Shown piece by piece: positions 13,101 to 59,148 of a stretch of 64,000 nucleotides of DNA. Source of the DNA: Octopus sinensis (lineage: Eukaryota); assembly GCF_006345805.1 (NCBI RefSeq), contig NW_021833586.1:1-64000 (forward strand). The letters run 5' to 3'. Under the pieces are notes generated by a model, which was given only the letters and a program-made list of their open reading frames with translations, was not told the origin of the DNA and ran no database searches. Position 1 is the first letter of the stretch; the number at the start of each line of letters is the position of its first letter. Both the position numbers and the translations under genes were made by a program.

Positions 13101-14224
13101 CAACCCTCTTGATCTTTGTCGGCACTCTCTTTGATCTTGTCGGCACTCCTCTTTGATCTTTGTCGGCACCCCTCTTTGATCTTTTTCGGCACCCTTTGAT
13201 CTTTGTCGGCACTCCTCTTTGATCTTTGTCGGCACTCCTCTTTGATCTTTTTCGGCACCCTCTTTGATCTTTTTCGGCACTCCTCTTTGATCTTTTTCGG
13301 ACTCCTCTTTGATCTTTGTCGGCAACATCCTTGATCTTGTCGGCACCCTCTTTGATCTTGTCGGCACTCCTCTTTGATCTTTGTCGCACTCTCTTTGATC
13401 TTTGTCGGCACTCCTCTTTGATCTTTTTCGGCACCCTCTTTGATCTTTGTCGCACTCCTCTTTGATCTTTGTCGGCACTCCTCTTGATCTTTTCGGCACC
13501 CTCTTTGATCTTTGTCGGCACTCCTCTTTGATCTTTGTCGGCACCCCTCTTTGATCTTTTTCGGCACCCCTCTTTGATCTTTTTCGGCACCCTACTGATC
13601 TTTTTTCGCACTCCTCTTTGATCTTTGTCGGCAATCCTCTTTGATCTTTGTCGGCATCCTATTTGATCTTTGTCGGCATCCTTTGATCTTTTTCGGCACT
13701 CCTCTTTGATCTTTGTCGGCACTCCTCTTGATCTTTGTCGGCACCATCTTTGATCTTTGTCGGCCTCCTCTTTGATCTTTTCGGCACCCTCTTTGATCTT
13801 TGTCGGCACCTCTTTGATCTTTGTCGGCACTCCTCTTTGATCTTTGTCGGCACTCCTCTTTGATCTTTGTCGGCACTCTCTTGATCTTTGTCGGCACCCT
13901 CTTTGAACTTCTTGTCGGCACTCCTCTTTGATCTTTTTCGGTACCCCTCTTTGATCTTGTCGGACACCTCTTTGATCTTTTTCGGCACCCTCTTTGATCT
14001 TGGTCGGCACTCCTTGAAATACAGGTACAACAGAAACAGGAAGTAAGTGAGGAGAGAGTTGTGGTGAAACAGTACAGCAGGGACCCACCACCCTGCCGGA
14101 GCATCGTGGAGCTTTAGGTGTTTTCGCTCAAAAAAAACACTCACAACGCCCGGTCTGGGAATCGAAACCGCGATCCTACGACCGCGAGTCCGCTGCCCTA
14201 ACCATTGGGCCATTGCGCCTCCAC
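10190..14224 (-). mobile_element. tRNA-derived SINE family C split by a 3.7-kb minisatellite
   Basis: 10190-10272 and 14014-14224 align with the two halves of the intact copy at 58761-59148. Both ends are flanked by (CTA)n-CTCAGGTTTT(T)A.CATAT (about 10136-10189 and 14225-14275). Confidence 0.85.
10272..14013. repeat. 23-bp minisatellite array, about 160-170 units
   Basis: Unit CCTCTTTGATCTTTGTCGGCACT with recurrent variants (TTTTT/TTTGT, CACC, GGTACC). The right-hand third is richer in indels. Confidence 0.97.
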
Positions 14225-16470: not shown

Positions 16471-16662
16471 CTATGTATGTATGTATATATATGTATGTAT
16501 GTATATCTATATATATATATATATATATATGCATACATACACACACATATACTTACACATGCACACACACACACAAAACAATATAGATACCTATAAACAC
16601 AGATATAAACGCATAAATATATACATACATAGACGCATATATAAATATATATCTATATAGAT

Positions 16663-16698
<36 letters not shown>

Positions 16699-16789
16699 TA
16701 TATATATACATACATATATATTTTATTAATGCTTGTATACACTTACATAAACATACACACACCAATATATATAAAACTATATATATATA

Positions 16790-16832
<43 letters not shown>

Positions 16833-16927
16833 CATGTGTATATTTGTATACACACACACATACACACACCAACAACTTTAACGAACTACACACATTTCCT
16901 ACTGAAGCGGGAGGTGACAAACAACCC

Positions 16928-17105
16928 ATGTTCGGGAAGAGCTGCTTTAGGTTGGATCCACCACCTGCCATTTGGTTACCTACGTTACAAGAAAAACATT
17001 ATGAAGATGATGATGATGATATAAGGGAGAACGAGGACTTCAAGAAAACTAAACACCAAGGTGATACCATTTTTCCTTGGATGCAGAAACGTCACTCTCT
17101 AATAG
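16928..17105 (+). CDS. Hox gene exon 1 (hexapeptide exon); the start codon is provisional
   Basis: [60 protein letters not shown]. It contains the IFPWM hexapeptide. Donor AG|GTATGT at 17105/17106 is phase 1, matching the acceptor at 25560. The frame is open further 5' (to 16844) into a microsatellite, so the true start or an upstream exon is unresolved. Confidence 0.8.
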
Positions 17106-22498: not shown

Positions 22499-23009
22499 GT
22501 GTGTGTGTTTTTGAGTCTGTGTTTGTCCCCCTAGCATTGCTTGACAACCGATGCTGGTGTGTTTACGTCCCCGTCACTTTGCGGTTCGGCAAAAGAGACC
22601 AATAGAATAAGTACTGGGCTTACAAAAAATAAGTCCCGGGGTCGATTTGCTCGACTAAAGGCGGTGCTCCAGTATGGCCGCAGTCAAATGATTGAAACAA
22701 GTAAAAGAGTAAAGAGAGAGTATATCATCAGGACACATAGGATCCCGGTTGAGGACTACTGGAATAAGGTCTACGTACGTAGCGCTTTAAGCAAACATTA
22801 TCTTAACAATTAAATGAAATCAAAGTCAGAGACGCAAATTGTCACAAATCAAACATTTAATTTATGTATACTAGATTGTTCAATGCCAGTAATAATATTT
22901 ATTAATTATGCACATACCTTCATAGAAGTCTGAGTTGCGTTGTCAAAATGTCGAAAGACAGAAAGCACACACACAATAACCAATAATTATATGTATATAT
23001 ATATTATAT

Positions 23010-24046: not shown

Positions 24047-24809
24047 TAATATATATATATATGTACGTATAGATATATGTATATATACATATGTATATAT
24101 GCAAATATATATTATCTATATTATATATATATATATTGCTCCAGCATGGCCGCAGTCAATATGACTGAAACAAGTAAAAAAAAAAGATATATATATATAT
24201 ATGATAGGCTTCTTTCAGTTTTCATCTACCAAATCCACTCACAAGGCTTTGATCGGCCTGAGGCTATAGTAGAAGACACTTGCCCAACGTGCCACGCGGT
24301 GGGATTGAACCCGGAACCATGTGGTTGGTGAACAAGCTACTTACCACACAGCCACGTATATATATACATATATATATGAGTACTTGTACGTGTGTGCGCG
24401 CGTGTGTGTGTGTGTATGCATATATGTATACATATATGCGTATATATGTGCACATATATATGTGACTCTATGAGTATGCGTGTGTGTGTATGTGTGTGTG
24501 TGTGTGTGTGCTCTTGTTTAAAAATGAAGCGTATTATATAATGTGGGATGCATATACAATGACACTTTATATGCGACACCCTAGATATAAACTGACTTTA
24601 ACAGTTTTTTTCCCCTTTTATCCATGTTCTGTAGACGTTTACACGTGTTGTTGGAACGTATGAGACTCTGAAATCTTTCATACTGAAGTTGGCACATTTA
24701 ATTCAGAACCATATATATTTCACAAATCCCATATGGAATCAGTTCTTGTTTTTGAGAATAAAACCTCTCTTTCGACTCCATTCCCTTCCGTCGCTCATAT
24801 GTAGTTATT

Positions 24810-24996
24810 AGTGCTGTTGTTGTTGTTGCTGTTGTTGTTGTTGTTGTTTTGTTGTTTTGTTGTTGTCGTTATTGTCGTTGTTGTTGTTGTTGTTGTTGTT
24901 GTTGTTATTCTTTATGTCCTATATTTTTTCTGAAATGTGTAAATCATAGACACACCCAATAATAATAACAATAATAATAATAATAATAATAATAAC

Positions 24997-25043
<47 letters not shown>

Positions 25044-25191
25044 TAGCAGCAGCAACAACAACAACAAAACAACAACAATAATAATAATAATAATAATAAT
25101 AGTATAATAATAATATAATAATATAATAATAATGATAGCAGCAGCAACAACAACAACAACAACAACAACAATAATAATAATAATAATAATA

Positions 25192-25227
<36 letters not shown>

Positions 25228-25310
25228 TAATAATAATTATTATATTATATTATTATTATTATTATTGTTATTGTTATTACCTCTTCTAAATAATAATAAT
25301 AATAATAATA

Positions 25311-25353
<43 letters not shown>

Positions 25354-25395
25354 TATTATTATTATTATTATTATTATTACCTCTTCTACTATTAT
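24810..25395. repeat. Compound (GTT)n/(AAT)n/(AAC)n microsatellite
   Basis: Directly visible, ending about 170 bp upstream of the Hox exon 2 acceptor. Confidence 0.95.
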
Positions 25396-25560
25396 AATTC
25401 TTTATAAATTTGGAACAAGGTCACGATTTTTAAGGGAAGGTGTAAGTCGATTACATTAACATCATTATTCAACATAAGTTTAATGATAACAATAACCAGA
25501 TTAATAAAAAATAATAATTTCTATGATTTTCTATGAATATTCTCTTATGGTTTTTCGCAG

Positions 25561-26117
25561 GACATGGTAAAAATGTTGAAGAGTCGAAAAGAAATCGGAC
25601 AACCTATAGCCAGCACCAAATTCTGGAATTGGAGAAAGAATTTCTCTTCGATAAATATCTTAACAAAAGAAGAAGAGTTGAAATTGCCGATTCTTTAAAT
25701 CTGAGAGAAAGACAAATCAAAATTTGGTTCCAAAATCGACGTATGAAGTGGAAAAAGGAACATCAATTCAACTGTAAAAACCGAATGGTTCAGTTGTCCG
25801 ATTGTCAACAACTGTTGAGTTTGAACACCAGTGGCATCCAGGTACCAAAACAGCCTCGGCAGCAGCTACAACTGGAACAACAGAGAATACAACTTCAACA
25901 ACTACTGCAAGAGCAGCAGCAGCAACAATATCAACAGCTTCAGCACCATGGTCCATATCATGAACAGCAACAGGACCACCGGCAACCGGAGCAGAGCGGC
26001 CCCCATCGACACCAGAAAGAAGATAAGCAACAACCTACGAACCATCAACAACATCGACAGTATCATCATTATTTTCAACATCTACAGCAAGTGGAGGCGC
26101 AATGGCCCAGTGGTTAG
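25561..26117 (+). CDS. Hox gene exon 2: divergent Antp-class homeodomain (Hox4/Dfd or Hox5/Scr) with a Q/H-rich tail
   Basis: Acceptor TTTTTCGCAG|GA at 25560/25561. Homeodomain 25584-25763: [60 protein letters not shown]. The spliced product from ATG 16928 is 244 aa. The last 8 aa and the TAG come from a SINE. Confidence 0.92.
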
Positions 26118-26473
26118 GGCAGCGGACTCACGGTCGGAGGATCGCGGTTTCGATTCCAAGACCGGGCGTTTGTGTGTGTTTATTGAGCGAAAATACCTAA
26201 AGCTCCACGATCTCCGGCAGGGGGTGGTGGCGACCCCTGTTGAACTCTTTCGCTCCAACTTTCTCTCACTCTTTCTTCCTGTTTCTTGTCCCCGATTTCC
26301 TACGCAACCGCTGAGCCTGGATGCGCATTCATCCATCCGTCGATGCTCTCGGTGTCGGGCGTTGACCTGCTTTCTCTTCTGCGGGTCTTACGAATAGCAA
26401 AGTACCACGTTTCGGACTTCTCCCACTACAGACGGGACGAAGACCGCTTCACTCAACAAACAAACAAAACAAG
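26091..26473 (+). mobile_element. Family C-headed SINE inserted in the Hox coding exon
   Basis: GTGGAGGCGCAATGGCCCAGTGGTTAGGGCAGCGG...GGTTTCGATTCC head is the same as the 14224 and 59148 copies. The 3' half differs and ends in a (CAAA)n tail. Confidence 0.9.
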
Positions 26474-26686
26474 CAAAAGCAGCAACAACAACATCAACAA
26501 CAGGTTCAGCACCATTGTCCATACCATGAACAGCTACAGGACCAACGGCAACAGCAGGAGAGTCGCCCCCATCGACACCAGAAAGAAGATAAACAACAAC
26601 AACCTACGAACCATCAACAAAACCGTCAGAATCATCATTATTATCAACATCGAGAGCAGTTAAATTATCACCAACAACAACACTAA
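26474..26686 (+). other. Orphaned, in-frame-compatible C-terminal coding segment of the Hox gene
   Basis: Reads [70 protein letters not shown]. It is a diverged duplicate of ~25918-26090. Confidence 0.7.
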
Positions 26687-27079
26687 CAACAGCAAAAACA
26701 ACATCATCGAGAGCAAAATAATGTCCATGTGTGCGTAATTCAAGTGTATGTAATAAACGAGATGCGGGAATTCACTCCCATTAAACCTGTATATTTTATC
26801 TTTTCTTTTACTTCTTTCAGGACTAACGGCCATGTTGGGGTACCACCTTGAAGACTTTTTAGTCGAATGAATCAATCCCAGTACCTTTTTAAAGTCTGGT
26901 ACTTATTCATCACAAACGATGAGCTTCTTTCAGTTTCCGCCTAACATATCCAATCATAAGTCTTTTGGTCGGCCCCAGGCTATAATAAAACAGACTTTCC
27001 CAAGTGCCACGCATTAGGCTGAACCCGTAACTATATTGCATAAATGCATGTATAAATACGTATATGCATCTATCTATCC

Positions 27080-27156
<77 letters not shown>

Positions 27157-28411
27157 ACTACCTACCTATCTATCTATGACACGTATATTATATTACTCTC
27201 TACTCTTTACTCTTTTACTTGTTTAAGTCATTTGACTGCGGCCATGCTGGAGCACCGCCTTTAGTCGAGCAAATCGACCCCGGGACTTATTCTTTGTAAG
27301 CCCAGTACTTATTCTATCGGTCTCTTTTTGCCGAGCCGCTAAGTGACGGGGATGTAAACACACCAGCATCGGTTGTCAAGCAATGCTAGAGGGATAAACA
27401 CACACACACAAACACATACATATATATATATACATATATACGACAGGCTTCTTTCAGTTTCCGTCTACCAAATTCACTCACAAGGCATTGATCGGCCCGG
27501 GGCTATAGCAGAAAACATTTGCCCAAGGTGCCATGCAGTGGGACTGAACCCGGAACGATGTGGTTGGTTAGCAAGCTACTTACCACACAGCCACTCCTGC
27601 GCCTATTAATGCATATATGTATAGTAACTTGTCTCACTATGTTCGCAGTTTTAGTAGCTGATAAACTGAACTATTATATATGAACTCCATCATGCACACA
27701 CGCGCACACGCACACACACAGTGCGTTTGTTGTTATCTTCTATGTCCTTCCTGTTGGGGCGTTAATTCTGGGCACCGGTGTGTAGTAATAATAAATGGAA
27801 TTTACCTGAAGCTTCCGAATGAGAGAGCGAGCCTACGTAAACAAAATTACAACAAAACAATAATGTCAGACTGAATGAGTAATAGAAAGTATGATAGGCG
27901 GGGGGGGGGAGATGAAGTGAGTAAGACAATGAGAAAGTGAATGATACAGGGACCACGTGGTTAATCGATAGAGCTCCTGAAGAGACATTTTTTTTTGGTT
28001 CTTTGTTTTCTAAGTGTTATCGCAATAACGAGAGTGCACTCGGTCACTGTTACCTAATGATCATAGGATCACTTTACAATATTGGCAGCAAGGCTAAGTG
28101 GACAGAAATTGATTATATCACATGCTGTGTGACGTAATGTATAATTAATTATAACGACACGCATATGTTTGCACGTATGTATGTATGTATGTATGTATGT
28201 ATGTATGTATGGAGGCTTTATGGCCTGTGAAAGGATGAAAGGCCAAAGATGAACATAAGTGCATGAATGTATTTGAAACCCAAGAGCGTGAAGCATGAAG
28301 CTAAATACTGCAATACATTTAGTTTAGCTTCAGTTTATTATTGCATATATATACATACATACATACATATATACACATGTATTAATGTATACATATATAT
28401 TATATAATATA

Positions 28412-28470
<59 letters not shown>

Positions 28471-29781
28471 ACAGGACCCGCAGGAGTGACTGTGTGGTTA
28501 GTTAGTAGCTTGCTAACCAACAACATGGTTCCGGGTTCAGTTCCATTGCGTGGCATCTTGGGCCAGTGTCTTCTGCCTTGTGAGTGGATTTGGTAGACGG
28601 AAACTGAAAGAAGCCTGTCGTATATATGAATATATATATATGTGTGTGTGTGTGTTTGTGTGTCTGTGTTTGTCACCCCTAGCATTGCTTGACAACCGAT
28701 GCTGGTGTGTTTACCTCCCGGTCACTTAGCGGTTCGGCAAAAGAGACCGATAGAATAAGTACTGGGCTTACAAAGAATAAGTCCTGGGGTCGATTTGCTC
28801 GACTAAAGGCGGTGCTCCAGCATGGCCGCAGTCAAAATAACTGAAACAAGTAAAAGAGTAAAGTGTAAAAAGTATATATATATATAAGTATATATATACG
28901 TGTTTGTGTATATATATATCTACGTATATATGTATCGTAGTAATAGTTCGATCACTGTATTCGCTATATAGTTTATATTGATCTTATGCAGCAAATGTTA
29001 AGAGCACTAGATAAACTTGATTTACTGTATATCACAGCTTTCATCTACATATCTACATAAATCTAACTAAGTTACTTAGCGGTTCGGCAAAAGAGACCGA
29101 TAAAATAAGTACTGGGCTTACAAAAGAATAAGTCCCGGGGTCGACTTGCTCGATTAAAGGTGGTGCTCCAGCATGGCCGCAGTCAAATGACTGAAACAAG
29201 TAAAAGAAAAAATATATATATATAAATGAATATTCACCTGTCACAGGTACTAATCCAACTGTCTAATATATCTTTGTTTATGAGTATATGCCTAAATAAT
29301 TGTGCGTGAGTGCTAAATATATATATATATATATACAGGATTGAAATTCGAGCTGCTGTTAGTTTCATACTGTAGAACCACAATGGTTGCACAAGCATAT
29401 CCAGCAGGCCGTTTGTTTCCAAGCAATCTTTGAGACTCAAATGCATAACATAGCTGGTATTTGAGAAAGAAAACGTGTAAAACCAGCGTCGTTTTTTTCT
29501 GCTTTTTTTGTTTTGTTTTAGAGACTAGTCATGTTGTATATTTAAACGGCCAAAATTGCTTGGAATCATACGGGGCAAAGCATAAGAGCTTTTCCGGTCA
29601 TCGTTGTTTCACAGCATGATACTAACACTGGTTTGAACTTAAATCCTGTGTGAAATAAACAATATTAATCTCTCACGCGATGGAGTGCTCGTTTGTTGAT
29701 CCCGCGAATAGCGGAATAGAGCATCATATACATAGATACCCATACATATACATACATGCACACACACACACACACACACAC

Positions 29782-30970: not shown

Positions 30971-31370
30971 ACGATTTCTCTATAAGTGTGTTTACAAGGG
31001 GATCCTCAGAGAAGAGAATATGGAAGAGTTCAGAGTTGCAAATGTTACAGAATCTCCTGCCCTTATCAAAAGGAAAGGATACAGACACCACCACGACCAC
31101 TTATTAAGTCAATCCCACTCACTAAGCACCACCACCACCATAGCTTAACAACTGATGTTGATGTGTTTACGTCCCCGTCACTTAGCAGTTCGGCAAAAGA
31201 GACCGATAGAATTAGTAGTAGGCTCACAAAAGATTAAGTTCTGGGGTCGATTTCTTCGACAGAAACCCTTTAACGCAGTGCTCCAGCATGGCCGCAGTCT
31301 AATGACCGAAACAAATAAAAGCCTAAGAGCATAAAAGAACGTAAATATGTGTGCGGTGCTACCAACTCTT

Positions 31371-32282
31371 CCATGACCACCACCACAACAACAAACATTA
31401 CTACCACTATCACCACTACTATCTCAAACACCACCATCACGAGCACTACTACCATCAATACCATGACCACCACCACAACTACAACCATTACAACCACCGT
31501 CACCACTACCATCTCAAACACCACCACCACCAGCACTATTATCACCACTACCATAACCACCACCAGCACTACTACCATGACCACCACCACCACAACAACA
31601 ACCATTACCACCACTACTATCTCAAACAGCACCAGCACCAGCACTACTACAACCACTACCATGACCACCACCACAACTACAACCATCAGAACTACTATCT
31701 CAAACAGCACCACCACCAGCACTACTACAACCACTACCATGACCACCACCACAACTACAACCATCAGAACTACTATCTCAAACAGCACCACCACAGCACT
31801 TACAACCACTACATGACCACCACCACAACTACAACCATCAGAACTACTATCTCAAACAGCACCACCACCAGCACTACTACAACCCACTACCATGACCACC
31901 ACCCACAACTACAACCATCAGAACTACTATCTCAAACAGCACCACCACCAGCACTACTACAACCACTACCATGACCACCACCACAACTACAACCATCAGA
32001 ACTACTATCTCAAACAGCACCACCACCAGCACTACTACAACCACTACCAAGACCACCACCACAACTACAACCATCAGAACTACTATCTCAAACAGCACCA
32101 CCACCAGCACTACTACAACCACTACCATGACCACCACCACAACTACAACCATCAGAACTACTATCTCAAACAGCACCACCACCAGCACTACTACAACCAC
32201 TACCATGACCACCACCACAACTACAACCATCAGAACTACTATCTCAAACAACGCCACCACCACCACCCACAACAACAACAAA
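31371..32282. repeat. 78-bp ACC/ACT-rich minisatellite, about 11 units
   Basis: Unit ATGACCACCACCACAACTACAACCATCAGAACTACTATCTCAAACAGCACCACCACCAGCACTACTACAACCACTACC. Period 78 confirmed between 31971 and 32049. Confidence 0.9.
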
Positions 32283-32679
32283 AGCCTTCATTGTATTGCA
32301 GCAGGTAAAAGAGAAGGGATGTCAGAAATATCGAAGACCCACAATCCACCCCACCCAAAACCCACCCCACCCCACCCCAGCCCGACCCCAGCACCAGAGA
32401 TTCAGGTTTACGAAAGATCCTGTATTAAAATCTAAAGTGAAAACTCTTCTTCTTCCCGACATGTTGCTGCAATTTCACAATGCCTCTGCCATACTCACGC
32501 GCAGAACTCCTGGTTCCTAATTCTAGAGAAAATCGGTCGAATTAAATATATTTTGTTTTTGTTGTTGTTGTTGTTGTTGTCCAGCCCCCAAGAAAGCCTA
32601 ATCGAAGACATCCAGTCGTGACCAACCAACCTTTTATTCCGTGATCTTTATATAAAAATAACAGCCAAAAGAAGTGTTC

Positions 32680-35600
32680 GTTGGTTGGCTGGTTGGCTGG
32701 TTGGTCGGTTGGTGGGTGGGTCGGCAGAATGGCTGGAATGCCGTCTGTTTGGCTAGTTGGTTGGTTTGTCGGTTGGACGTGGAACGCCTGGTTGGCTGGT
32801 TTGTCATGTGTCGGCTGGTTGGCTGGTTTGTCGGTTGGTTGACTGGTTGGTTGGTCTGTCGGTTGGTTGACTGGTTGGCTGGTTTGTCGGTTGGTTGACT
32901 GGTTGGTTGGTCTGTCGGTTGGTTGCATGGTTGGCTGGTTTGTCGGTTGGTTGACTGGTTGGTTGGTCTGTCGGTTGGTTGAATGGTTGGCTGGTTTGTC
33001 GGTTGGTTGACTGGTTGGCTGGTTTGTCGGTTGGTTGACTGGTTGGTTGGTCTGTCGGTTGGTTGACTGGTTGGTTGGTCTGTCGGTTGGTTGACTGGTT
33101 GGCTGGTTTGTCGGTTGGTTGACTGGTTGGCTGGTTTGTCGGTTGGTTGACTGGTTGGTTGGTCTGTCGGTTGGTTGACTGGTTGGCTGGTTTGTCGGTT
33201 GGTTGCCTGGTTGGTTGGTCTGTCGGTTGGTTGACTGGTTGGCTGGTTTGTCGGTTGGTTGAATGGTTGGCTGGTTTGTCGGTTGGTTGACTGGTTGGCT
33301 GGTTTGTCGGTTGGTTGACTGGTTGGTTGGTCTGTCGGTTGGTTGACTGGTTGGCTGGTTTGTCGGTTGTTGACTGGTTGGTTGGTCTGTCGGTTGGTTG
33401 ACTGGTTGGTTGGTGTCGTCGGTTGGTTGACTGGTTGGCTGGTTTGTCGGTTGGTTGACTGGTTGGTTGGTCTGTCGGTTGGTTGACTGGTTGGCTGGTT
33501 TGTCGGTTGGTTGACTGGTTGGTTGGTCTGTCGGTTGGTTGACTGGTTGGCTGGTTTGTCGGTTGGTTGACTGGTTGGTTGGTCTGTCGGTTGGTTGACT
33601 GGTTGGTTGGTCTGTCGGTTGGTTGACTGGTTGGCTGGTTTGTCGGTTGGTCGTCGGCCGACTGGTTGGCTGGTTTGTCGGTTGGTTGAATGGTTGGTTG
33701 GTTTGTCGGTTGGTTGACTGGTTGGCTGGTTTGTCGGTTGGTTGACTGATTGGTTGGTCTGTCGGTTGGTTGACTGGTTGGCTGGTTTGTCGGTTGGTTG
33801 ACTGGTTGGTTGGTCTGTCGGTTGGTTGACTGGTCTGGTTGGTTGGTCTGTCGGTTGGTTGACTGGTTGGCTGGTTTGTCGGTTGGTTGACTGGTTGGTT
33901 GGTCTGTCGTTGGTTGACTGGTTGGTTGGTCTGTCGGTTGGGTTGACTGGTTGGCTGGTTTGTCGGTTGGTCGTCGGCCGACTGGTTGGCTGGTTTGTCG
34001 GTTGGTTGAATGGTTGGTTGGTTTGTCGGTTGGTTGACTGGTTGGTTGGTCTGTCGGTTGGTTGACTGGTTGGCTGGTTTGTCGGTTGGTTGACTGGTTG
34101 GTTGGTCTGTCGGTTGGTTGACTGGTTGGCTGGTTTGTCGGTTGGTTGACTGGTTGGTTGGTCTGTCGGTTGGTTGACTGGTTGGTTGGTCTGTCGGTTG
34201 GTTGACTGGTTGGCTGGTTTGTCGGTTGGTTGACTGGTTGGTTGGTCTGTCGGTTGGTTGACTGGTTGGTTGGTCTGTCGGTTGGTTGACTGGTTGGCTG
34301 GTTTGTCGGTTGGTTGAATGGTTGGTTGGTTTGTCGGTTGGTTGACTGGTTGGTTGGTCTGTCGGTTGGTTGACTGGTTGGCTGGTTTGTCGGTTGGTTG
34401 ACTGGTTGGTTGGTCTGTCGGTTGGTTGAATGGTTGGCTGGTTTGTCGGTTGGTTGACTGGTTGGCTGGTTTGTCGGTTGGTTGACTGGTTGGTTGGTCT
34501 GTCGGTGTGACTGGTTGGCTGGTTTGTCGGTTGGTTGACTGGTTGGTTGGTCTGTCGGTTGGTTGACTGGTTGCTTGGTCTGTCGGTTGGTTGACTGGTG
34601 GCTGGTTTGTCGGTTGGTCGTCGGCCGACTGGTTGGCTGGTTTGTCGGTTGGTTGAATGGTTGGTTGGTTTGTCGGTTGGTTGACTGGTTGGCTGGTTTG
34701 TCGGTTGTTTGGTTGACTGGTTGGGTTGGTTGGTCTGTCGGTTGGTTGACTGGTTGGCTGGTTTGTCGGTGGTTGACTGGTTGGTTGGTCTGTCGGTTGG
34801 TTGACTGGTGGCTGGTTTTGTCGGTTGGTTGACTGGTTGGCTGGTTTGTCGGTTGGTCGTCGGCCGACTGGTTGGCTGGTTTGTCGGTTGGTTGACTGGT
34901 TGGTTGGTTTGTCGGTTGGTTGACTGGTTGGCTGGTTTGTCGGTTGGTCGTCGGCCGACTGGTTGGCTGGTTTGTCGGTTGGTTGACTGGTTGGTTGGTT
35001 TGTCGGTTGGTTGACTGGTTGGTTGGTTTGTCGGTTGGTTGACTGGCTGGCTGGTTTGTCGGTTGGTCATCGGCCAACTGGTTGGCTGGTTTGTCGGTTG
35101 GACATATGTCAGCTGGTTGGTCGGTTGAATGGTTGGCTGGTTTGTCGGTTGGTCGTCGGTCGGCTAGTTGGTTGGTTTGTCGGTTGGACGTGGAACGCCT
35201 GGTTGGCTGGTTTGTCGGCTGGTTGGCTGGTTGGCTGGTTTGTCGGTTGGTTGACTGGTTGGTTGGTTTGTCGGTTGGTTGACTGGTTGGCTGGTTTGTC
35301 GGTTGGTTGACTGGTTGGCTGGTTTGTCGGTTGGTCGTCGGCCGACTGGTTGGCTGGTTTGTCGGTTGGTTGACTGGTTGGTTGGTCTGTCGGTTGGTTG
35401 ACTGGTTGGCTGGTTTGTCGGTTGGTTGACTGGTTGGCTGGTTTGTCGGTTGGTTGACTGGTTGGCTGGTTTGTCGGTTGGTTGACTGGTTGGTTGGTCT
35501 GTCGGTTGGTTGACTGGTTGGCTGGTTTGACGGTTGGTTGACTGGTTGGCTGGTTTGTCGGTTGGTCGTCAGCCGACTGGTTGGCTGGTTTGTCGGTTGG

Positions 35601-38600
35601 TTGACTGGTTGGTTGGTTGTCGGTTGTTGGTTGACTGGTTGGCTGGTTTGTCGGTTGGTCGTCGGCCGACGGTTGGCTGTTTGTCGGTTGGTTGACTGGT
35701 TGGTTGGTTTGTCGGTTGGTTGACTGGTTGGTTGGTTTGTCGGTTGGTTGACTGGCTGGCTGGTTTGTCGGTTGGTCATCGGCCAACTGGTTGGCTGGTT
35801 TGTCGGTTGGACATATGTCAGCTGGTTGGTCGGTTGAATGGTTGGCTGGTTTGTCGGTTGGTCGTCGGTCGGCTGGTTGGCTGGTTTGTCGGTTGGTTGA
35901 CTGGGTGGTTGGTTTGTCGGTTGGTTGACTGGCTGGCTGGTTTGTCGGTTGGTCATCGGCCAACTGGTTGGCTGGTTTGTCGGTTGGACATATGTCAGCT
36001 GGTTGGTTGGTTGAATGGTAGGCTGGTTTGTCGGTTGGTCGTCGGTCGGCTGGTTGGCTGGTTTGTCGGTTGGTTGACTGGTTGGTTGGTGGGTCGGTTG
36101 GTTGACTGGTTGGCTGGTTTGTCGGTTGGTTGACTGGTTGGTTGGTTTGTCGGTTGGTTGACTGGTTGGTTGGTTTGTCGGTTGGTTGACTGGCTGGCTG
36201 GTTTGTCGGTTGGTCATCGGCCAACTGGTTGGCTGGTTTGTCGGTTGGACATATGTCAGCTGGTTGGTCGGTTGAATGGTTGGCTGGTTTGTCGGTTGGT
36301 TGACTGGTTGGTTGGTGGGTCGGTTGGTTGACTGGTTGGCTGGTTTGTGGGTTGGTCGTCGGCCGGCTGGTTGGGTGGTTTGTCAGTTGGTTGACTGGTT
36401 GGTTGGTGGGTCGGTTGGTTGACTGGTTGGCTGGTTTGTCGGTTGGTTGACTGGTTGGTTGGTTTGTCGGTTGGTTGACTGGTTGGCTGGTTTGTCGGTT
36501 GGTCATCGGCCAACTGGTTGGCTGGTTTGTCGGTTGGACATATGTCAGCTGGTTGGTTGGTTGAATGGTTGGCTGGTTTGTCGGTTGGTCGTCGGTCGGC
36601 TGGTTGGCTGGTTTGTCGGTTGGTTGACTGGTTGGTTGGTGGGTCGGTTGGTTGACTGGTTGGCTGGTTTGTCGGTTGGTCGTCGGCCAACTGGTTGGCT
36701 GGTTTGTCGGTTGGTTGACTGGTTGGTTGGTTTGTCGGTTGGTTGACTGGTTGGTTGGTTTGTCGGTTGGTTGACTGGTTGGCTGGTTTGTCGGTTGGTC
36801 ATCGGCCAACTGGTTGGCTGGTTTGTCGGTTGGTCGTCGATCAGCTGGCTGGCTGGTTTGTCAGTTGGTTTACTGGTTGGTTAACTGGTTGGCTGGTTTG
36901 TCGGTTGGACATATGTCAGCTGGTTGGTTGGTTTGTCGGGGTTTTTACTGGTTGGTTGGTGGGTCAGTTTGTTGACAGGTTGGCTGGTTTGTCGGTTGGT
37001 CGTCGGTCGGCTGTTGGTTGGCTGGTTTGTCGGTTGGTTTACTGGTTGGTTGGTGGGTCGGTTGGTTTGACTGGTTGGCTGGTTTGTCAGTTGGACATAT
37101 GTCAGCTGGTTGGTTGGTTGTCGGGTTGTTTACTGGTTGGTTGGTGGGTCGGTTGGTTGACTGGTTGGCTGGTTTGTCGGTTGGTCGTCGTGGCGGGCTG
37201 GTTGGCTGGTTTGTCGGTGGTTTACTGGTTGGTTGGTGGGTCGGTTGGTTGACTGGTTGGGGATGTTTGTCGGTTGGACATATGTAAGCTGGTTGGTTAG
37301 TTTGTCGGTTGGTTGACTGGTTGGCTGGTTTGTCGGTTGGTCGTCGGTCGGCTGGTCGGCTGGTTTGTCGGTTAGTTTACTGGTTGGTTGGTGGGTCGGT
37401 TGGTTGGTGTGTCGGGTGGTTGACTGGTTGGTTGGTTTGTCGGTTGGACATATGTCAGCTGGTTGGTTGGGTTGTCGGTTGGTTGACTGGTTGGTTTGTT
37501 GGTCGGTTGGTTGACTGGTTGGCTGGTTTGTCGGTCGGATATTTGTCAGCTGGTTGGTTGGTTTGTCGGTTGGTTGACTGGTCGGCTGGTTTGTCGGTTT
37601 GTCGTCGATCAGCTGGCTGGCTGGTTTGTCAGTTGGTTTACTGGTTGGTTGACTGGTTGGCTGGTTTGTGGGTTGGACATATGTCAGCTGGTTGGTTGGT
37701 TTGTCGGTTGGTTTACTGGTTGGTTGGTGGGTCAGTTTGTTGACAGGTTGGCTGGTTTGTCGGTTGGTCGTCGGTCGGCTGGTTGGCTTGTTTGTCGGTG
37801 GTTTACTGGTTGGTTGGTGGGTCGGTTGGTTGACTGGTTGGCTGGTTTGTCGGTTGGTCGTCGGTCGGCTGGTTGGCTGGTTTGTCGGTTGGTTTACTGG
37901 TTGGTTGGTGGGTCGGTTGGTTGACTGGTTGGCTGGTTTGTCGGTTGGACATATGTAAGCTGGTTGGTTAGTTTGTCAGTTGGTTGACTGGTTGGCTGGT
38001 TTGTCGGTTGGTCGTCGGTCGGCTGGTCGGCTGGTTTGTCGGTTAGTTTACTGGTTGGTTGGTGGGTCGGTTGGTTGTCTGGTTGGCTGGTTTGTCGGGT
38101 TGTTTACTTGTTGGTTGGTCTGTCGGTTGGTTGACTGGTTGGCTGGTTTGTCGGTTGGACATATGTCAGCTGGTTGGTTGGTCTGTCGGTTGGTTGACTG
38201 GTTGGCTGGTTTGTCGGTTGGACATATGTCAGCTGGTTGGTTGGTTTGTCGGTTGGTTTACTGGTTGGTTGGTGGGTCAGTTTGTTGACTGGTTGGCTGG
38301 TTTGTCGGTTGGTCGTCGGTCGGCTGGTTGGCTGGTTTGTCGGTTGGTTTACTGGTTGGTTGGTGGGTCGGTTGGTTGACTGGTTGGCTGGTTTGTCGGT
38401 TGGACATATGTCAGCTGGTTGGTTGGTTTGTCGGTTGGTTTACTGGCTGGTTGGTGGGTCGGTTGGTTGACTGGTTGGCTGGTTTGTCGGTTGGTCGTCG
38501 GTCGGCTGGTTGGCTGGTTTGTCGGTTGGTTGGCTTGTTAGTCGGTTTGTCGTCGGCCGACTGGTTGGCTGGTTTGTCGGTTGGTTTACTGGTTGGTTGG

Positions 38601-39976
38601 TGGGTCGGTTGGTTGACTGGTTGGCTGGTTTGTCGGTTGGTCGTCGGTCGGCTGGTTGGCTGGTTTGTCGGTTGGTCGTCGGTCGGCTGGTTGGCTGGTT
38701 TGTCGGTTGGTCGTCGGTCGGCTGGTTGGCTGTTTGTGGTTGGTTGGTGGTCGGTTGGTTGTCTGGTTGGCTGGTTTGGTCGGTTGGTCGTCGGTCGGTG
38801 TTTGTTGGCTGGTTTACTTGTTGGTTGGTGGGTCGGTTGGTTGACTGGTTGGCTGGTTGTCGGTTGGACAATGTCAGCTGGTTGGTTGGTCTGTCGGTTG
38901 GTTGACTGGTTGGCTGGTTTGTCGGTTGATGAACATATGTCAGCTGGTTGGTTGGTTTGTCGGGTGGTTTACTGGTGGGTGGGTGGGTCAGTTTTGTTAC
39001 TGGTTGGCTGGTTTGTCGGTTGGTTCGTCGGTCGGCTGGTGGCTGGTTTGTCGGTGGTTTATTGGTGGTTGGTTGGTTGGTTGGTTGGTTGACTGGTTGG
39101 CTGGTTTGTCGGTTGGGCATATGTCAGCTGGTGTGGTTGGTTGTCGGTTGGTGTTACTGGCTGGTTGGTGGGTCGGTTGGTTGACTTGTTGGCTGGTTGT
39201 CGGTTGGTCGTCGGTCGGCTGGTTGGCTGGTTTGTCGGTTGGTTGTCTTGTTAGTCGGTTTGTCGTCGGCCGACTGGTTGGCTGGTTTGTCGGTTGGTTT
39301 ACTGGTTGGTTGGTGGGTCGGTTGGTTGACTGGTTGGCTGGTTTGTCGGTTTGTCGTCGGTCGGCTGGTTGGTTGGTTTTTCGTTTAGTGGGCTGGTTGG
39401 TTGGTTGGTCGGTGGGTCTGCTGGCTGGTTGGTTTGTCGGTTGGCCGTCGGTCGGCTTGTTTACTGGTTTGTCGGCTGGTTGACTGGTTGGTTTGTCGGT
39501 TGGTTGTCTGGTTGGTTGGTTTGACTGTGGGGGTGGCTGTTTGGCTGGTTGGCTGGTTTGTCGGTTTGTTTGCTGGTTGGCTGGTGCGCCGGTTGGTTGG
39601 CTTGTTTGTTGGTTGGTTGGTTGATTCGCTGGGTGGTCGGTGGATCGGTTGGTTGGTTGCTTAGTCGATTGGTCGTGGTTCAGCTGGTTGGTTGGCTGGT
39701 GGTTTGGTTGGTCGGTTGGTCGTGGGTCGGCTTGTTAATTTGTCGGTTGGTTGGCTGGTGGGCTGATTGGTCGGTTATTCGGCTGGTTGGTTTGTTGGTC
39801 GGTTGGTCATATGTCGGCTGGATTTTTGGTTGATGGTTGGTTGGCTGGTTTGTCCGTTGGTTGGCTGGTTGGCTTGTTGGTTAGTTGGTCAACTGGTTGG
39901 TTGGTCGGCGGGTTTGCTGTTTCGCTGGTTTGTCCGTCGGTTGGCTGGTTGGTAGGTTGGTCCGCTGGTTGGTTGA
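32680..39976. repeat. 7.3-kb 28-bp (GGTT)n-derived minisatellite with variant cassettes
   Basis: Unit GGTTGGTTGACTGGTTGGCTGGTTTGTC. Cassettes include GGACATATGTCAGCTGG, GTCGTCGGCCGACTGG and GTCATCGGCCAACTGG. It degenerates toward 39-40 kb. Confidence 0.97.
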
Positions 39977-41830: not shown

Positions 41831-42233
41831 TATATGAGTGGCTGTGTGGTAAGTAGCTTGCTAACCAACCACATGGTTCCGGGTTCAGTCCCACTGCGTG
41901 GCATCTTGGGCAAGTGTCTTCTGCTATAGCCCCGGGCCGACCAATGCCTTGTGAGTGGATTTGGTAGAGGGAAACTGAAAGAAGCCTGTAGTATATATGT
42001 ATATATATATATGTGTGTGTTTGTGTGTCTGTGTTTGTCCCCCTAGCATTGCTTGACAACCGATGCTGGTGTGTTTACGTCCCCGTCACTTAGCGATTCG
42101 GCAAAAGAGACCGATAGAATAAGTACTGGGCTTACAAAGAATAAGTCCTGGGGTTAATTTGCTCGACTAAAGGCGGTGCTCCAGCATGGCCGCAGTCAAA
42201 TGACTGAAACAGGTAAAAGAGTAAAAGAGTAAA

Positions 42234-42270
<37 letters not shown>

Positions 42271-47314: not shown

Positions 47315-47494
47315 GATATAATTACATATTATATTTTATATTTTATATTTCTATTTCCTTGTCTAATTATATTTACAATAATTTTGTATAATGCCTTTAC
47401 TGTATGTAATGGTGTAATAAAGTATTGATTGGGTATCATCGTTGGTATGATCTTTGATTGGTTGATGTCTCCATTTTCTAATTTTGTATGAGAG

Positions 47495-47670
47495 CGCAAT
47501 GGCCTAGTGGTTAGGGCAGCGGACTCGCGGTCGCAGGATCGCGGTTTCGATTTTCAGACTGGGCGTTGTGTGTGTTTATTGAGCGAAAAGACCTAAAGCT
47601 CTACGAGGCTCCGCAGGGGTGGTGATCCCTGCTGTACTCTTTCACTCTTTCACTACAATGGCGGTGCCCC
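47495..47670 (+). mobile_element. Partial family C SINE
   Basis: GCGCAATGGCCTAGTGGTTAGGGCAGCGGACTCGCGG head. A shorter head fragment lies at 50182-50222. Confidence 0.8.
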
Positions 47671-47840
47671 AGCATGCCCAGCTCAAGAGCGAAACTGGAT
47701 AAATCAAAACAAAACAAAACAAATATATATAATATATATATATTATATATATGTGTGTGGTGTGTGTGTGTAATATATACATATATACAAATATTATACA
47801 TATATATGTACATATATATATACACATATATATCTATTAT

Positions 47841-48603: not shown

Positions 48604-50041
48604 TATATATATACACATATATATATATTTGACAGTTATTTTAATTATCCCATTTTAATGTTATCAGTTACTTGTCATTGTTCATTTTTGTCTCATTAGA
48701 CGAGAGGAGCCGTGTTGTCCAACCTTGCTACTATTATATACGGATACGTGTATACACACATGCATAATGCGCGTGTGCGTGTGTGTATGTATGTTCATGT
48801 ATATATATATATATATATATGTATGCATGTAACCTTCTGTATTATGACTACTGTAAGAAAGACCAATCTGTGTGTTCGATATAAACATGAACTATTCAAA
48901 TAGCAATTTTGTCCAGAGGGTGTTGTTAAAGGCTCAGTCCAACATCCGAATTGGTCGTACAGGTGCATATTGTCATCTGGGATACTTATAAGAATACTCT
49001 TTTACCCTTTTACTTGTTTCAGTCATTTGACTGCGGCCATGCTGGAGCACCACCTTTAGTCGAGCAAATCGACACCAGGACTTATTCTTTGTAAGCCTCG
49101 TACTTATTCTTTCGGTCTCTTTTGCCGAGCCGCTAAGTTACGGGGACGTAAACACACCAGCATCGGTTGTCAAGCGATTTTGGGGGGTACAAACACAGAC
49201 ACACAAACACACACACATACATACATACATATGTACGACGGGCTTCTTTCAGTTTCTGTCTACCAAATCCACACACAAGGCTTTGGTCGGCCCGAGGCTA
49301 TAGTAGAAGACACTTGCCCAAAGTGCCACGCAGTGGGATTGAACCCGGAACCATGTGGTTGGCAAGCAAGCTACTTACCACACAGCCACTCCTGCGCCTA
49401 TGTCGAACTATTTGTCGTTTTTGTTAGAGCGTCGTACTCACAAACTTGAGATAGTGAGTTCGATTTCCGGACCGGGCTGCGTGTTGTGTTCTTGAGCAAA
49501 ACACTTTATTTCACGTGGCTCCAGTTCACTCAGCTGTGGAAAGGATTTGCGACGTCATAAGTGCCAAGCTGTATCGGTCTTTGCCTTTCCCTCGGATAAC
49601 ATCGGTACCATGGAGAAGGGGTGCTGGTATGCATGGGCGACTGATAGTCCTCCATAAACAAGCTCACTCGGGCTTCTGTCTTGGAAAGTACATTTCTAGG
49701 TTCAATCCCATCGTCATTCCTGACCGAAGGGTGTCTTTACGCTTACCCTTTATGTATGTACGCATTTTTATATGCTTGTATAGCTGAAAGAAGTTTAAAG
49801 AAATATATGTATATATGTATGTACGTATATTTACATTGGTTTAACATTTTAGCACGAGGCCAGCAATCTTCGGAAAGGGGCTAACCGATAACATTGACCC
49901 CACTACTCAACTTGTACTTATTTTATCGATCCCGAAATTATGAAAGGCGAAGCCGACCTCGCAGGAATTTCAGCTCATATTTTACTATACATATCCATCA
50001 TTTTCTGTTAAAAGGACTTATAGACGAGTTTCATTTCTTCA

Positions 50042-58720: not shown

Positions 58721-58760
58721 TGTTTCTGAAATACGAAGACAAAATCACTGATGCTGGTAT

Positions 58761-59148
58761 GGATGGAAGCACTCCGTCGGTTACGACGACGAGGGTTCCG
58801 GTTGATCCGAATCAATGGAACAGCCTGCTCGTGAAATTAACGTGTAAGTGGCTGAGCACTCCACAGACACGTGTACCCTTAACGTAGTTCTCGGGGATAT
58901 TCAGCGTGACGCAGAGAGTGACAAGGCCGGCCCTTTGAAATACAGGTACAACGGAAACAGGAAGTAAGAGTGAGAGAAAGTTGTGGTGGAAGAGTACAGC
59001 AGGGATCACCACCATCCCCTGCCGGAGCATCGTGGAGCTTTAGGTGTTTTCGTTCAATAAACACTCACAACGCCCGGTCTGGGAATCGAAACCGCGATCC
59101 TATGACCACGAGTCCGCTGCCCTAACCACTGGGCCATTGCGCCTCCAC
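58761..59148 (-). mobile_element. Intact family C SINE with a target-site duplication
   Basis: TSD TGATGCTGGTAT at 58749-58760 and 59149-59160. A-box-like (TGGCCCAGTGG) and B-box-like (GGTTTCGATTCCC) motifs are present. Confidence 0.92.

What the first reader, a model, noticed from the sequence alone, without database searches (positions are those of the whole stretch)
26091..26686. A SINE inside a Hox coding exon either truncates the protein or acts as a new GT-AG intron
Seen: the SINE starts exactly at a codon boundary (CAA|GTGGAG, 26091). It donates VEAQWPSG and the TAG stop, which overlaps its A-box region. Its tail ends ...CAAAACAAG at 26473. Joining 26090 to 26474 gives CAA-CAA-AAG-CAG in frame and a stop-free 70-codon extension to TAA at 26684-26686 (306 aa versus 244 aa). 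The AGs at 26479 and 26482 are also in frame. Inference: this is either a recent truncating insertion, possibly polymorphic, or a SINE that became an intron or exitron and yields two C-terminal isoforms. The donor (GTGGAG) is weak and the acceptor has no polypyrimidine tract, so splicing is unproven.
Basis: partly seen in the sequence, partly recalled or inferred. Interest (0 to 1): 0.85.

Follow-up and report, generated by a model that had tools for sequence, protein, structure and literature searches.

The report
Old SINE ends octopus Hox4-like gene
An old mobile element (SINE) sits in the last exon of a divergent Hox4-like gene of Octopus sinensis and supplies its last eight codons and stop; the "in-frame extension" behind it is a decayed 183-base duplicate of the coding sequence just upstream, most likely made by the insertion itself, and nothing in the sequence suggests a new intron.

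Summary
The window is Octopus sinensis contig VCDQ01003319.1. The gene is a divergent Hox4/Dfd-like homeobox gene, with exon 1 at 16928-17105 and exon 2 starting at 25561.

A 383-nt tRNA-related SINE (26091-26473) interrupts the Gln/His-rich tail of the ORF. It adds VEAQWPSG and a TAG.

That is why joining 26090 to 26474 reads in frame. The "extension" is a second copy of the preceding 61 codons, followed by what is probably the original last 8 codons, the TAA and an AATAAA.

- **Timing.** Repeat divergence (14%) is about twice the SINE's private divergence (7%). This fits a long target-site duplication made at insertion.
- **Effect on the protein.** On that reading the protein was not shortened by 62 residues. 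Only its last 8 residues were swapped.
- **Age.** The insertion is old, not recent.
- **Intron model.** The donor matches 4/9 consensus positions, the acceptors are 20-35% pyrimidine, and an open downstream frame is expected about one time in three under neutrality.

No transcripts or orthologues could be retrieved, so splicing and the empty site remain untested.

The parts
16928..17105 (+). Exon 1 of the homeobox gene: ATG plus 59 codons and 1 nt. It holds the hexapeptide FPWM (17072-17083). Donor is TAG|GTATGT.
   Evidence: Identical to the N-terminus of RefSeq XP_036355485.1.
25561..26090 (+). Exon 2 coding sequence upstream of the SINE: homeodomain 25584-25763, then a Gln/His-rich tail.
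   Evidence: Pfam PF00046 is recorded for the RefSeq product.
25907..26089 (+). Upstream copy (A) of the direct repeat, 183 nt (61 codons). It ends at the SINE 5' end.
   Evidence: boundaries are sharp, and BLAST E = 1e-50 against the downstream copy. No other copy exists in the window.
26091..26473 (+). tRNA-related SINE in sense orientation, 383 nt, with a (CAAA)n-type tail.
   Evidence: other copies share nt 1-~210 and the same 5' end; tail. The 3' half (26300-26473) has no second copy in the window.
26097..26168 (+). tRNA-like head, with an A-box-like TGGCCCAGTGG (26103-26113) and a B-box-like GGTTTCGATTCC (26147-26158).
   Evidence: A tRNA-like fold is found only at a relaxed ARAGORN threshold. 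Default ARAGORN and Rfam at E<=1 find nothing.
26091..26117 (+). SINE-encoded C-terminus VEAQWPSG plus the TAG stop (26115-26117).
   Evidence: The TAG lies in GTGGTTAGGGC, which is conserved in all four copies.
26473..26658 (+). Downstream copy (A') of the direct repeat, 186 nt. It starts at the SINE 3' end. It has 26 substitutions and one in-frame 3-nt indel relative to A.
26660..26686 (+). Probable original last 8 codons (LNYHQQQH) and the original TAA stop, now in the 3' UTR.
   Evidence: They lie immediately after the end of the repeat. Their ancestral status is an inference.
26752..26757 (+). First AATAAA downstream, 66 nt after the old TAA. Probably the polyadenylation signal.
   Evidence: There is no AATAAA or ATTAAA between 26081 and 26751.
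58937..59148 (-). Another copy of the same SINE 5' module, with a different 3' module and an ordinary 12-15 bp target-site duplication.
14032..14224 (-). Another copy of the SINE 5' module. It runs into a 23-bp satellite.
47494..47647 (+). Another, shorter copy of the SINE 5' module, with a (CAAAA)n tail.

Best explanation
A tRNA-related SINE retroposed, in sense orientation, into the CAA/CAG-rich 3' end of the last exon of a divergent Hox4/Dfd-like gene. This happened long ago. Integration was by target-primed reverse transcription, with the second-strand break about 183 nt from the first. Fill-in therefore duplicated 61 codons of coding sequence as an unusually long target-site duplication.

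The upstream copy stayed joined to the ORF. The ORF now runs 8 codons into the SINE head (VEAQWPSG) and stops at the TAG of the SINE's D-loop-like GGTTAGGG. The rest of the SINE, the downstream duplicate, the original last 8 codons (LNYHQQQH), the original TAA and the AATAAA became 3' UTR.

The net effect on the protein is a swap of the last 8 residues (244 aa before and after), not a 62-residue truncation. The new stop is in the last exon, so no exon-junction-dependent decay is expected.

Shown directly by the sequence: the SINE, its stop codon, and the exact flanking repeat. Inferred: the repeat arose with the insertion, the SINE is not spliced out, and the gene still functions.
For: 1. Both ends of the 183/186-nt repeat coincide with the ends of the insert. 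Identity begins at 25907 (paired with 26473) and ends at 26089 (paired with 26658), and falls to background immediately outside.
2. The repeat occurs only at this site in the 64 kb window (E = 1e-50).
3. No ordinary-length target-site duplication flanks the insert. The best short repeat is CAGCAA (6 nt) in low-complexity sequence. The one other well-delimited copy has 12-15 bp.
4. Timing fits. A and A' differ at 26/183 sites (14.2%). The SINE has 14/190 (7.4%) private differences from the majority of three other copies. A ratio near 2 is what is expected if the two repeat copies began to diverge when the SINE arrived.
5. L1 insertions with target-site duplications above 100 bp are documented, at up to 10% of recovered events in HeLa cells (PMC5223499, read).
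6. The CAA-rich target resembles the SINE's (CAAA)n tail, which would favour priming there (inference).
7. The first polyadenylation signal is at 26752, just after the old stop.
8. Splice signals at the SINE ends are poor. The open downstream frame needs no selection (P = 0.29-0.36).
9. The 236 codons upstream are intact, which has P = 0.04-0.06 under neutral drift at d = 0.074. Differences between A and A' are biased towards synonymous changes only in the Gln/His frame: pN/pS 0.43 (one-sided P = 0.045), against 0.95 and 3.0 in the other frames.
Against: - A 183-nt target-site duplication is more than 10 times the one normal example seen for this SINE family here. Long ones are documented for human L1 in cultured cells, not for this SINE or its unknown LINE partner.
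- The age comparison rests on three other partial copies and about 190 sites, so confidence intervals are wide.
- The 3' half of the insert has no second copy in the window. Its SINE identity rests on the tail and on the flanking repeat.
- No empty-site orthologue, no second individual and no transcript could be retrieved.
- RefSeq models a different CDS that ends at 25963.
- pN/pS below 1 between the copies would also fit both copies being translated.
Confidence: 0.6

Rival explanations
1. Pre-existing tandem duplication. The ancestral protein already had two 61-residue Gln/His-rich units (about 306 aa). The SINE later landed by chance at their junction with a very short target-site duplication, truly removing 62 residues.
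For: CAGCAA is present at 26085-26090 and again at 26480-26485 and could be a 6-bp target-site duplication. Low-complexity Gln-rich tails do expand. pN/pS of 0.43 between the copies would fit both having been coding for part of their history.
Against: It needs two coincidences. First, the insertion must fall within a few nt of the junction of a 369-nt two-copy array (about 2%). Second, the repeat divergence must be about twice the SINE's own divergence. A 6-nt match in CAG/CAA-rich sequence is expected by chance, and the normal target-site duplication seen for this family is 12-15 bp. There are only two copies and no further array.
Confidence: 0.2
2. The SINE is a facultative intron (exitron). 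Some transcripts splice 26091-26473 (or to 26479 or 26482) and yield a 306-aa isoform with a duplicated unit and the old C-terminus.
For: GT at 26091 and AG at 26472-26473, 26478-26479 and 26481-26482 all restore the homologous frame. The downstream frame is open for 70 codons to the old TAA. The synonymous bias between the two copies is in the right frame.
Against: The donor matches 4/9 of CAG|GTAAGT, no better than 40% of nearby GTs. The acceptors have 20-35% pyrimidines and at most one T, against 75% and 12 T at the gene's real intron. The GT is simply the first two bases of every copy of this SINE. The open frame is expected in about one third of neutral simulations. The RefSeq annotation contains no such junction, which is weak evidence.
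Confidence: 0.06
3. The locus is a decaying relic of Hox4, neither ORF ending matters, and the SINE is one more hit on a dying gene.
For: Hox4/Dfd is reported as not found in O. bimaculoides and Argonauta argo, and was not recovered in O. vulgaris (PMC9635652, PMC10509229). There are only 59 codons before the intron, directly preceded by microsatellite. Thirteen homeodomain positions differ from the Hox4 consensus residue. RefSeq needs an odd 44-nt intron to model the gene.
Against: The 236-codon ORF is intact (P = 0.04-0.06 if neutral since the SINE arrived). Helix 3 and all columns invariant in the 18-sequence alignment are conserved. The hexapeptide and canonical splice sites are kept. There is a synonymous bias in the tail.
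Confidence: 0.15
4. Assembly artefact: the SINE and/or the second repeat copy were created by misjoining reads or haplotypes.
For: The assembly is long-read based and the region is repeat-rich. No reads could be inspected.
Against: The two repeat copies differ at 14% of sites plus one clean 3-nt indel, far beyond allelic or read-error differences after polishing, and both keep the reading frame. The SINE has its own private substitutions and complete ends.
Confidence: 0.04

Closest known systems
LINE-mediated (TPRT) insertions with long target-site duplications (human L1 events with duplications above 100 bp; Gilbert 2002/2005 and Symer 2002, as summarised in PMC5223499)
   Same: A retroposed element with complete ends and a 3' repeat tail is bracketed exactly by a direct duplication of target DNA much longer than the usual 5-30 bp. 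As that paper notes for large duplications in general, functional sequence is duplicated.
   Different: This is a SINE in a cephalopod with an unknown LINE partner. The event is ancient and inferred from diverged copies, not observed. The duplicated segment is coding and a multiple of three.
SINE exonisation or C-terminal replacement (for example Alu- or MIR-derived terminal coding sequence and stop codons in mammals; own knowledge)
   Same: A SINE inside a transcribed exon supplies a few codons and the stop, and turns the old C-terminus into 3' UTR.
   Different: No new splice site is involved. The ORF simply reads into the element. Because of the duplication almost no original residues are lost.
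Exitrons and transposon-born introns ('introners'; own knowledge)
   Same: A mobile element with GT...AG ends inside a coding exon, whose precise removal keeps an open frame.
   Different: Introners carry or create good splice signals and occur in many genes. Here the signals are poor, and the frame-preserving property is a by-product of the flanking duplication.
Lophotrochozoan Hox4/Deformed genes
   Same: FPWM hexapeptide, an ANTP-class homeodomain with an ESKRNRT N-terminal arm and HQIL, and an intron between hexapeptide and homeodomain. The sequence groups on the Hox4 side against Hox5 in 287/300 NJ bootstraps.
   Different: About 62% identity over the homeodomain plus flanks. Thirteen homeodomain positions depart from the Hox4 consensus residue. 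The LPNTK motif is degraded to F-NCKNRM. The N-terminal arm is very short. There is a long Gln/His-rich tail and a SINE-derived end.
tRNA-derived SINEs of cephalopods (octopus OR1/OR2/OK of Ohshima and Okada 1994; OR1 is listed as a CORE-SINE in PMC4824008)
   Same: A tRNA-like head with A and B boxes, a modular body, a simple-repeat tail, and high copy number in an octopus genome.
   Different: Family assignment was not tested because no SINE library was available. Copies in this window share the 5' ~200 nt but carry different 3' modules.

Membership tests
tRNA-derived SINE | Internal pol III A and B boxes in the 5' head | tested here: met
   TGGCCCAGTGG at 26103-26113 and GGTTTCGATTCC at 26147-26158, compared with the textbook consensus TRGCNNAGTGG / GGTTCGANNCC (own knowledge). 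The B box has one extra T.
tRNA-derived SINE | tRNA-like cloverleaf in the head | tested here: inconclusive
   ARAGORN at default settings finds none. Rfam finds no tRNA hit at E<=1. ARAGORN at the relaxed threshold -ps80 finds a tRNA-like fold at SINE nt 7-78 in both the focal copy and the 4-copy consensus.
tRNA-derived SINE | Dispersed copies that share the same 5' end | tested here: met
   Three further copies at 86-88% identity and one fragment in 64 kb. The full-length copies start GTGGAGGCGC.
tRNA-derived SINE | 3' simple-repeat or A-rich tail | tested here: met
   The element ends ...CAACAAACAAACAAAACAAG at 26473. Copy 47494 has a (CAAAA)n tail.
tRNA-derived SINE | Flanking target-site duplication | tested here: met
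   A direct repeat abuts both ends exactly, but it is 183 nt long. The ordinary length seen at copy 59148 is 12-15 bp.
Long-TSD retroposition event | The duplication is as old as the insert | tested here: inconclusive
   14.2% between the repeat copies against 7.4% private divergence of the SINE. The ratio is about 2 as predicted, but the samples are small.
Long-TSD retroposition event | The empty site in relatives carries a single copy of the duplicated segment | not testable with these tools
   No other cephalopod genome or orthologue could be retrieved.
Spliceosomal intron / exitron | GT...AG termini that keep the frame | tested here: met
   GT at 26091-26092. AG ends at 26473, 26479 and 26482, all in frame.
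Spliceosomal intron / exitron | Donor complementary to U1 (CAG|GTAAGT) | tested here: not met
   4/9 matches including the GT itself; 18 of 45 GTs nearby score as well or better. The gene's real donor scores 7/9.
Spliceosomal intron / exitron | Polypyrimidine tract before the acceptor | tested here: not met
   20-35% pyrimidines and 0-1 T in positions -22..-3, against 75% and 12 T at the real acceptor.
Spliceosomal intron / exitron | Spliced transcripts | not testable with these tools
   No transcript data were reachable.
Hox4/Deformed | ANTP-class homeodomain preceded by a hexapeptide | tested here: met
   PF00046 is recorded for the RefSeq product. FPWM is at 17072-17083. All columns invariant across the 18-sequence alignment are kept.
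Hox4/Deformed | Groups with Hox4 rather than its nearest class, Hox5 | tested here: met
   NJ on the homeodomain plus flanks places it on the Hox4 side in 287/300 bootstraps. The sampling covered Hox4 and Hox5 only, and the branch is long.
Hox4/Deformed | Post-homeodomain KLPNTK(T/S)R(L/M) motif | tested here: inconclusive
   The gene reads QF-NCKNRM. Only the N, K, R and M positions are retained.
Hox4/Deformed | Position between Hox3 and Hox5 in the Hox cluster | not testable with these tools
   This is the only homeobox in the 64-kb window, and the contig is 78.8 kb.

The most novel reading that the evidence does not exclude
The SINE is a newly born, weakly spliced intron (exitron) in a Hox gene. 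Its long target-site duplication supplies a second copy of a 61-residue module that is translated only when the SINE is spliced out. One retroposition event would then have created both a domain duplication and an alternative C-terminus.
Probability: 0.05. Interest if true: 0.7.

Novelty: new member of a known kind. Interest (0 to 1): 0.3.

Why it matters
As a SINE-born intron in a Hox gene the finding would have been striking, but the sequence gives that reading no support. Three smaller points remain.

1. It is a clean natural example of a retroposon insertion whose long target-site duplication copied 61 codons of an exon. This is a little-documented way to duplicate coding modules, and a trap for annotation, because it produces a false in-frame extension.
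2. A Hox-class protein apparently carries a SINE-encoded C-terminus.
3. The host gene looks like a fast-evolving Hox4/Dfd, a class reported as missing from octopods. This is worth a specialist's check against the other octopus genomes.

Tried and rejected
Searches that found nothing useful
- Orthologue C-termini. A full-length query found only the O. sinensis RefSeq model and distant Hox proteins. A C-terminus-only query found nothing. The all-representatives search gave only homeodomain-level relatives; the closest (77%) is a sea-slug Hox4.
- More SINE copies. A six-frame translation query found nothing. A 20-nt head probe gave one unrelated eukaryotic contig in metagenomes (L002) and nothing in viral or prokaryotic collections.
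- Independent assemblies or transcripts. Exact look-ups of four window ORFs that span the SINE junctions found nothing.
- Rfam. There was no tRNA or other meaningful hit on 25900-26700.

Readings considered and rejected
- Tandem duplication of a segment that included the SINE: rejected because there is only one SINE.
- Allelic duplication in the assembly: rejected because the copies differ by 14%.
- Rescue of the TAG by A-to-I editing: rejected because further stops follow in that frame within the SINE (frame +0).
- The open 70-codon frame as evidence of selection: rejected by simulation.

Full report
**Where we are.** The window is bases 1-64000 of contig VCDQ01003319.1 of the Octopus sinensis assembly GCA_006345805.1, with identical coordinates. 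It is AT-rich and full of microsatellites, satellites and SINEs.

**The gene.**
- Exon 1 (16928-17105) encodes 59 residues including the hexapeptide FPWM. It ends at a good donor, TAG|GTATGT.
- Exon 2 starts after a pyrimidine-rich acceptor at 25561. It encodes an ANTP-class homeodomain (25584-25763), the only homeobox in the window.
- Its best named relatives are lophotrochozoan Hox4/Dfd and Hox5 proteins, at about 60-64% identity over the homeodomain and flanks.
- In a Hox4-versus-Hox5 NJ test it falls on the Hox4 side in 287/300 bootstraps.
- RefSeq calls it 'homeobox protein Hox-C4a-like', XP_036355485.1.
- After the homeodomain the ORF continues through a Gln/His-rich tail to 26090.

**Checking the observation.**
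- From 26091 the frame reads VEAQWPSG and a TAG at 26115-26117.
- 26091-26473 is a real SINE. Three other copies in the window share its first ~160-210 nt at 86-88% identity, and the full-length ones begin with the same GTGGAGGCGC.
- It has A- and B-box-like motifs and a (CAAA)n-type tail.
- A tRNA-like fold at nt 7-78 is detected only at a relaxed ARAGORN threshold. Default ARAGORN and Rfam do not find it.
- Joining 26090 to 26474 gives 70 further sense codons and a TAA at 26684-26686.

The insert is bracketed exactly by a direct repeat of coding sequence: 25907-26089 (A) and 26473-26658 (A').
- Identity switches on at 25907/26473 and off after 26089/26658.
- The two copies match with E = 1e-50 and occur nowhere else in the window.
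- They differ by 26 substitutions in 183 aligned nt (85.8% identity) and one in-frame 3-nt indel.
- At the protein level...[51 protein letters not shown] is followed, after the SINE, by ...[52 protein letters not shown] and then LNYHQQQH*.
- The 'in-frame, stop-free extension' is therefore a second copy of the preceding 61 codons plus eight more codons and a stop. The first AATAAA lies 66 nt further on, at 26752. That is what the original end of the gene would look like.

**How the structure arose.** A single SINE sits exactly between two copies of target sequence. That is the signature of a target-site duplication, here 183 nt instead of the usual 5-30.
- Duplications above 100 bp are a documented minority outcome of L1 integration, at up to 10% of recovered events in HeLa cells and more in repair-deficient cells (PMC5223499).
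- No ordinary-length duplication flanks the insert. The best is CAGCAA in CAG/CAA-rich sequence. The one other cleanly delimited copy in the window has 12-15 bp.
- The divergence of the repeat copies (14.2%) is about twice the private divergence of the SINE from the majority of its three relatives (7.4%, 14/190). This is expected if A and A' were identical when the SINE arrived.
- The alternative is a pre-existing two-unit tandem repeat hit by chance at its junction. It needs a positional coincidence of about 2% plus the timing coincidence. I rate it about 0.2, against 0.6 for the best explanation, of which the insertion-coupled duplication is one part.
- A tandem duplication of a SINE-containing segment is excluded because there is only one SINE.
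- An assembly or haplotype artefact is very unlikely given 14% divergence and frame-preserving differences.

**Consequence for the protein.** Under the favoured model the pre-insertion protein ended ...HLQQ-LNYHQQQH (244 aa). The present one ends ...[12 protein letters not shown] (244 aa). The insertion swapped eight residues and lengthened the 3' UTR by about 570 nt. It did not remove 62 residues. The 306-aa form would be a new protein, not the ancestral one.

**Is the insertion recent?** No. The SINE differs at about 7% of sites and its flanking repeats at 14%. It should be shared with close relatives.

**Is the SINE an intron?** The sequence offers only GT and AG.
- The GT is simply the first two bases of every copy of this SINE.
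- The donor CAA|GTGGAG matches 4 of 9 positions of CAG|GTAAGT, which 18 of the 45 GTs in the exon/SINE region equal or beat. The gene's real donor matches 7.
- The three in-frame acceptors have 20-35% pyrimidines and at most one T in positions -22..-3, against 75% and 12 T at the real acceptor.
- The open downstream frame is not evidence of use. Starting from either copy, 29-36% of neutral simulations at d = 0.07 keep all 70 codons stop-free.
- The only hint of constraint is an excess of synonymous differences between A and A' in the Gln/His frame: pN/pS 0.43 (one-sided P = 0.045), against 0.95 and 3.0 in the other frames. Selection on the upstream, certainly translated copy explains that by itself.
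- I put the exitron reading at about 0.06. It needs transcript data, which I could not reach.

**Is the gene alive?**
- For: the 236 codons upstream of the SINE are intact, which happens in only 4-6% of neutral simulations at the SINE's divergence. Helix 3 and every column invariant in the 18-sequence alignment are kept. The hexapeptide and splice sites are intact.
- Against: thirteen homeodomain positions differ from the Hox4 consensus residue. The N-terminal arm is only 59 residues and abuts a microsatellite. Published surveys did not find Hox4 in O. bimaculoides or Argonauta argo, and did not recover it in O. vulgaris (PMC9635652, PMC10509229).
- The RefSeq model ends the CDS at 25963 through a 44-nt GT..AG 'intron' (25788-25831) with poor signals (donor 3/9, acceptor 50% pyrimidines) and a frame-shifted Ala/Thr-rich tail. 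The synonymous bias in the Gln/His frame beyond 25963 mildly favours the uninterrupted ORF over that model.

**Comparison with known things.** This is a SINE-supplied C-terminus (terminal exonisation without new splicing) combined with a long target-site duplication. Both are known kinds of event. It works like long-duplication L1 integrations. Membership could be tested only on structure (met) and timing (consistent), not on an empty site. It is not supported as an introner or exitron.

**Verdict.** This is a new example of known phenomena and of modest interest (0.3). The host gene's identity as a possible surviving octopod Hox4 is the more interesting lead.

Noticed in passing
window 16928-17105 and 25561-26117: The host gene groups with Hox4/Dfd rather than Hox5 (287/300 NJ bootstraps). 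Published octopod surveys report Hox4 as not found (O. bimaculoides, Argonauta argo) or not recovered (O. vulgaris). This may be a fast-evolving surviving Hox4: 13 homeodomain positions differ from the Hox4 consensus residue, and only 59 residues precede the intron.
   Followed up: partly
window 25788-25831: RefSeq XP_036355485.1 uses a 44-nt GT..AG 'intron' here. The donor is ATG|GTTCAG (3/9 to consensus) and the acceptor tract is 50% pyrimidine. It shifts the frame into an Ala/Thr-rich tail that ends at 25963. It looks like a modelling artefact. The uninterrupted Gln/His frame shows the only synonymous bias.
   Followed up: partly
window 10270-14014 and 14032-14224 (-): A 3.7-kb satellite of a 23-bp unit (about 166 copies, 90% matches) begins exactly where SINE copy 14224-14032 departs from its relative at 59148. 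Its unit (ATCAAAGAGGAGTGCCGACAAAG on the SINE strand) resembles the SINE's internal TTTCAAAGGGCCGGCC. The satellite appears to have been seeded from inside a SINE.
   Followed up: partly
window 32676-39975 and 31359-32266: A 7.3-kb strongly strand-skewed GTTG/28-mer satellite (GC 0.54, GC skew +0.56). Next to it is a 78/156-bp ACC-rich tandem array that creates long spurious ORFs on both strands.
   Followed up: no
window 26300-26473, 58740-58940 (-), 47590-47680: Copies of this SINE share the 5' ~200 nt but carry unrelated 3' modules and tails (a modular, 'jigsaw' structure). The 3' module of the focal copy has no second copy in the window.
   Followed up: partly
window 27195-27400 and at least 11 other places (for example 22520-22720, 28667-28873, 42032-42235, 48995-49178): A second, more abundant ~200-nt repeat family (contains ...TTGACTGCGGCCATGCTGGAGCACCGCC...), with 12 hits at 77-100% identity in 64 kb. 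One copy lies about 500 nt downstream of the gene's putative poly(A) signal.
   Followed up: no
L002 2205-2300 (JGI metagenome contig Ga0209781_1028822): An unrelated eukaryotic contig carries a tRNA-like element whose head shares the exact 20-mer GTGGTTAGGGCAGCGGACTC and similar downstream sequence. This suggests the same tRNA-like progenitor type in another animal.
   Followed up: no
window 24800-25400: The last ~600 nt of the 8.4-kb intron, ending about 160 nt before the acceptor at 25560, are almost pure (GTT)n/(AAT)n/(CAA)n microsatellite. The (TA)n/(CA)n run at 16560-16870 ends about 60 nt before the start codon. The gene is embedded in simple repeats.
   Followed up: no
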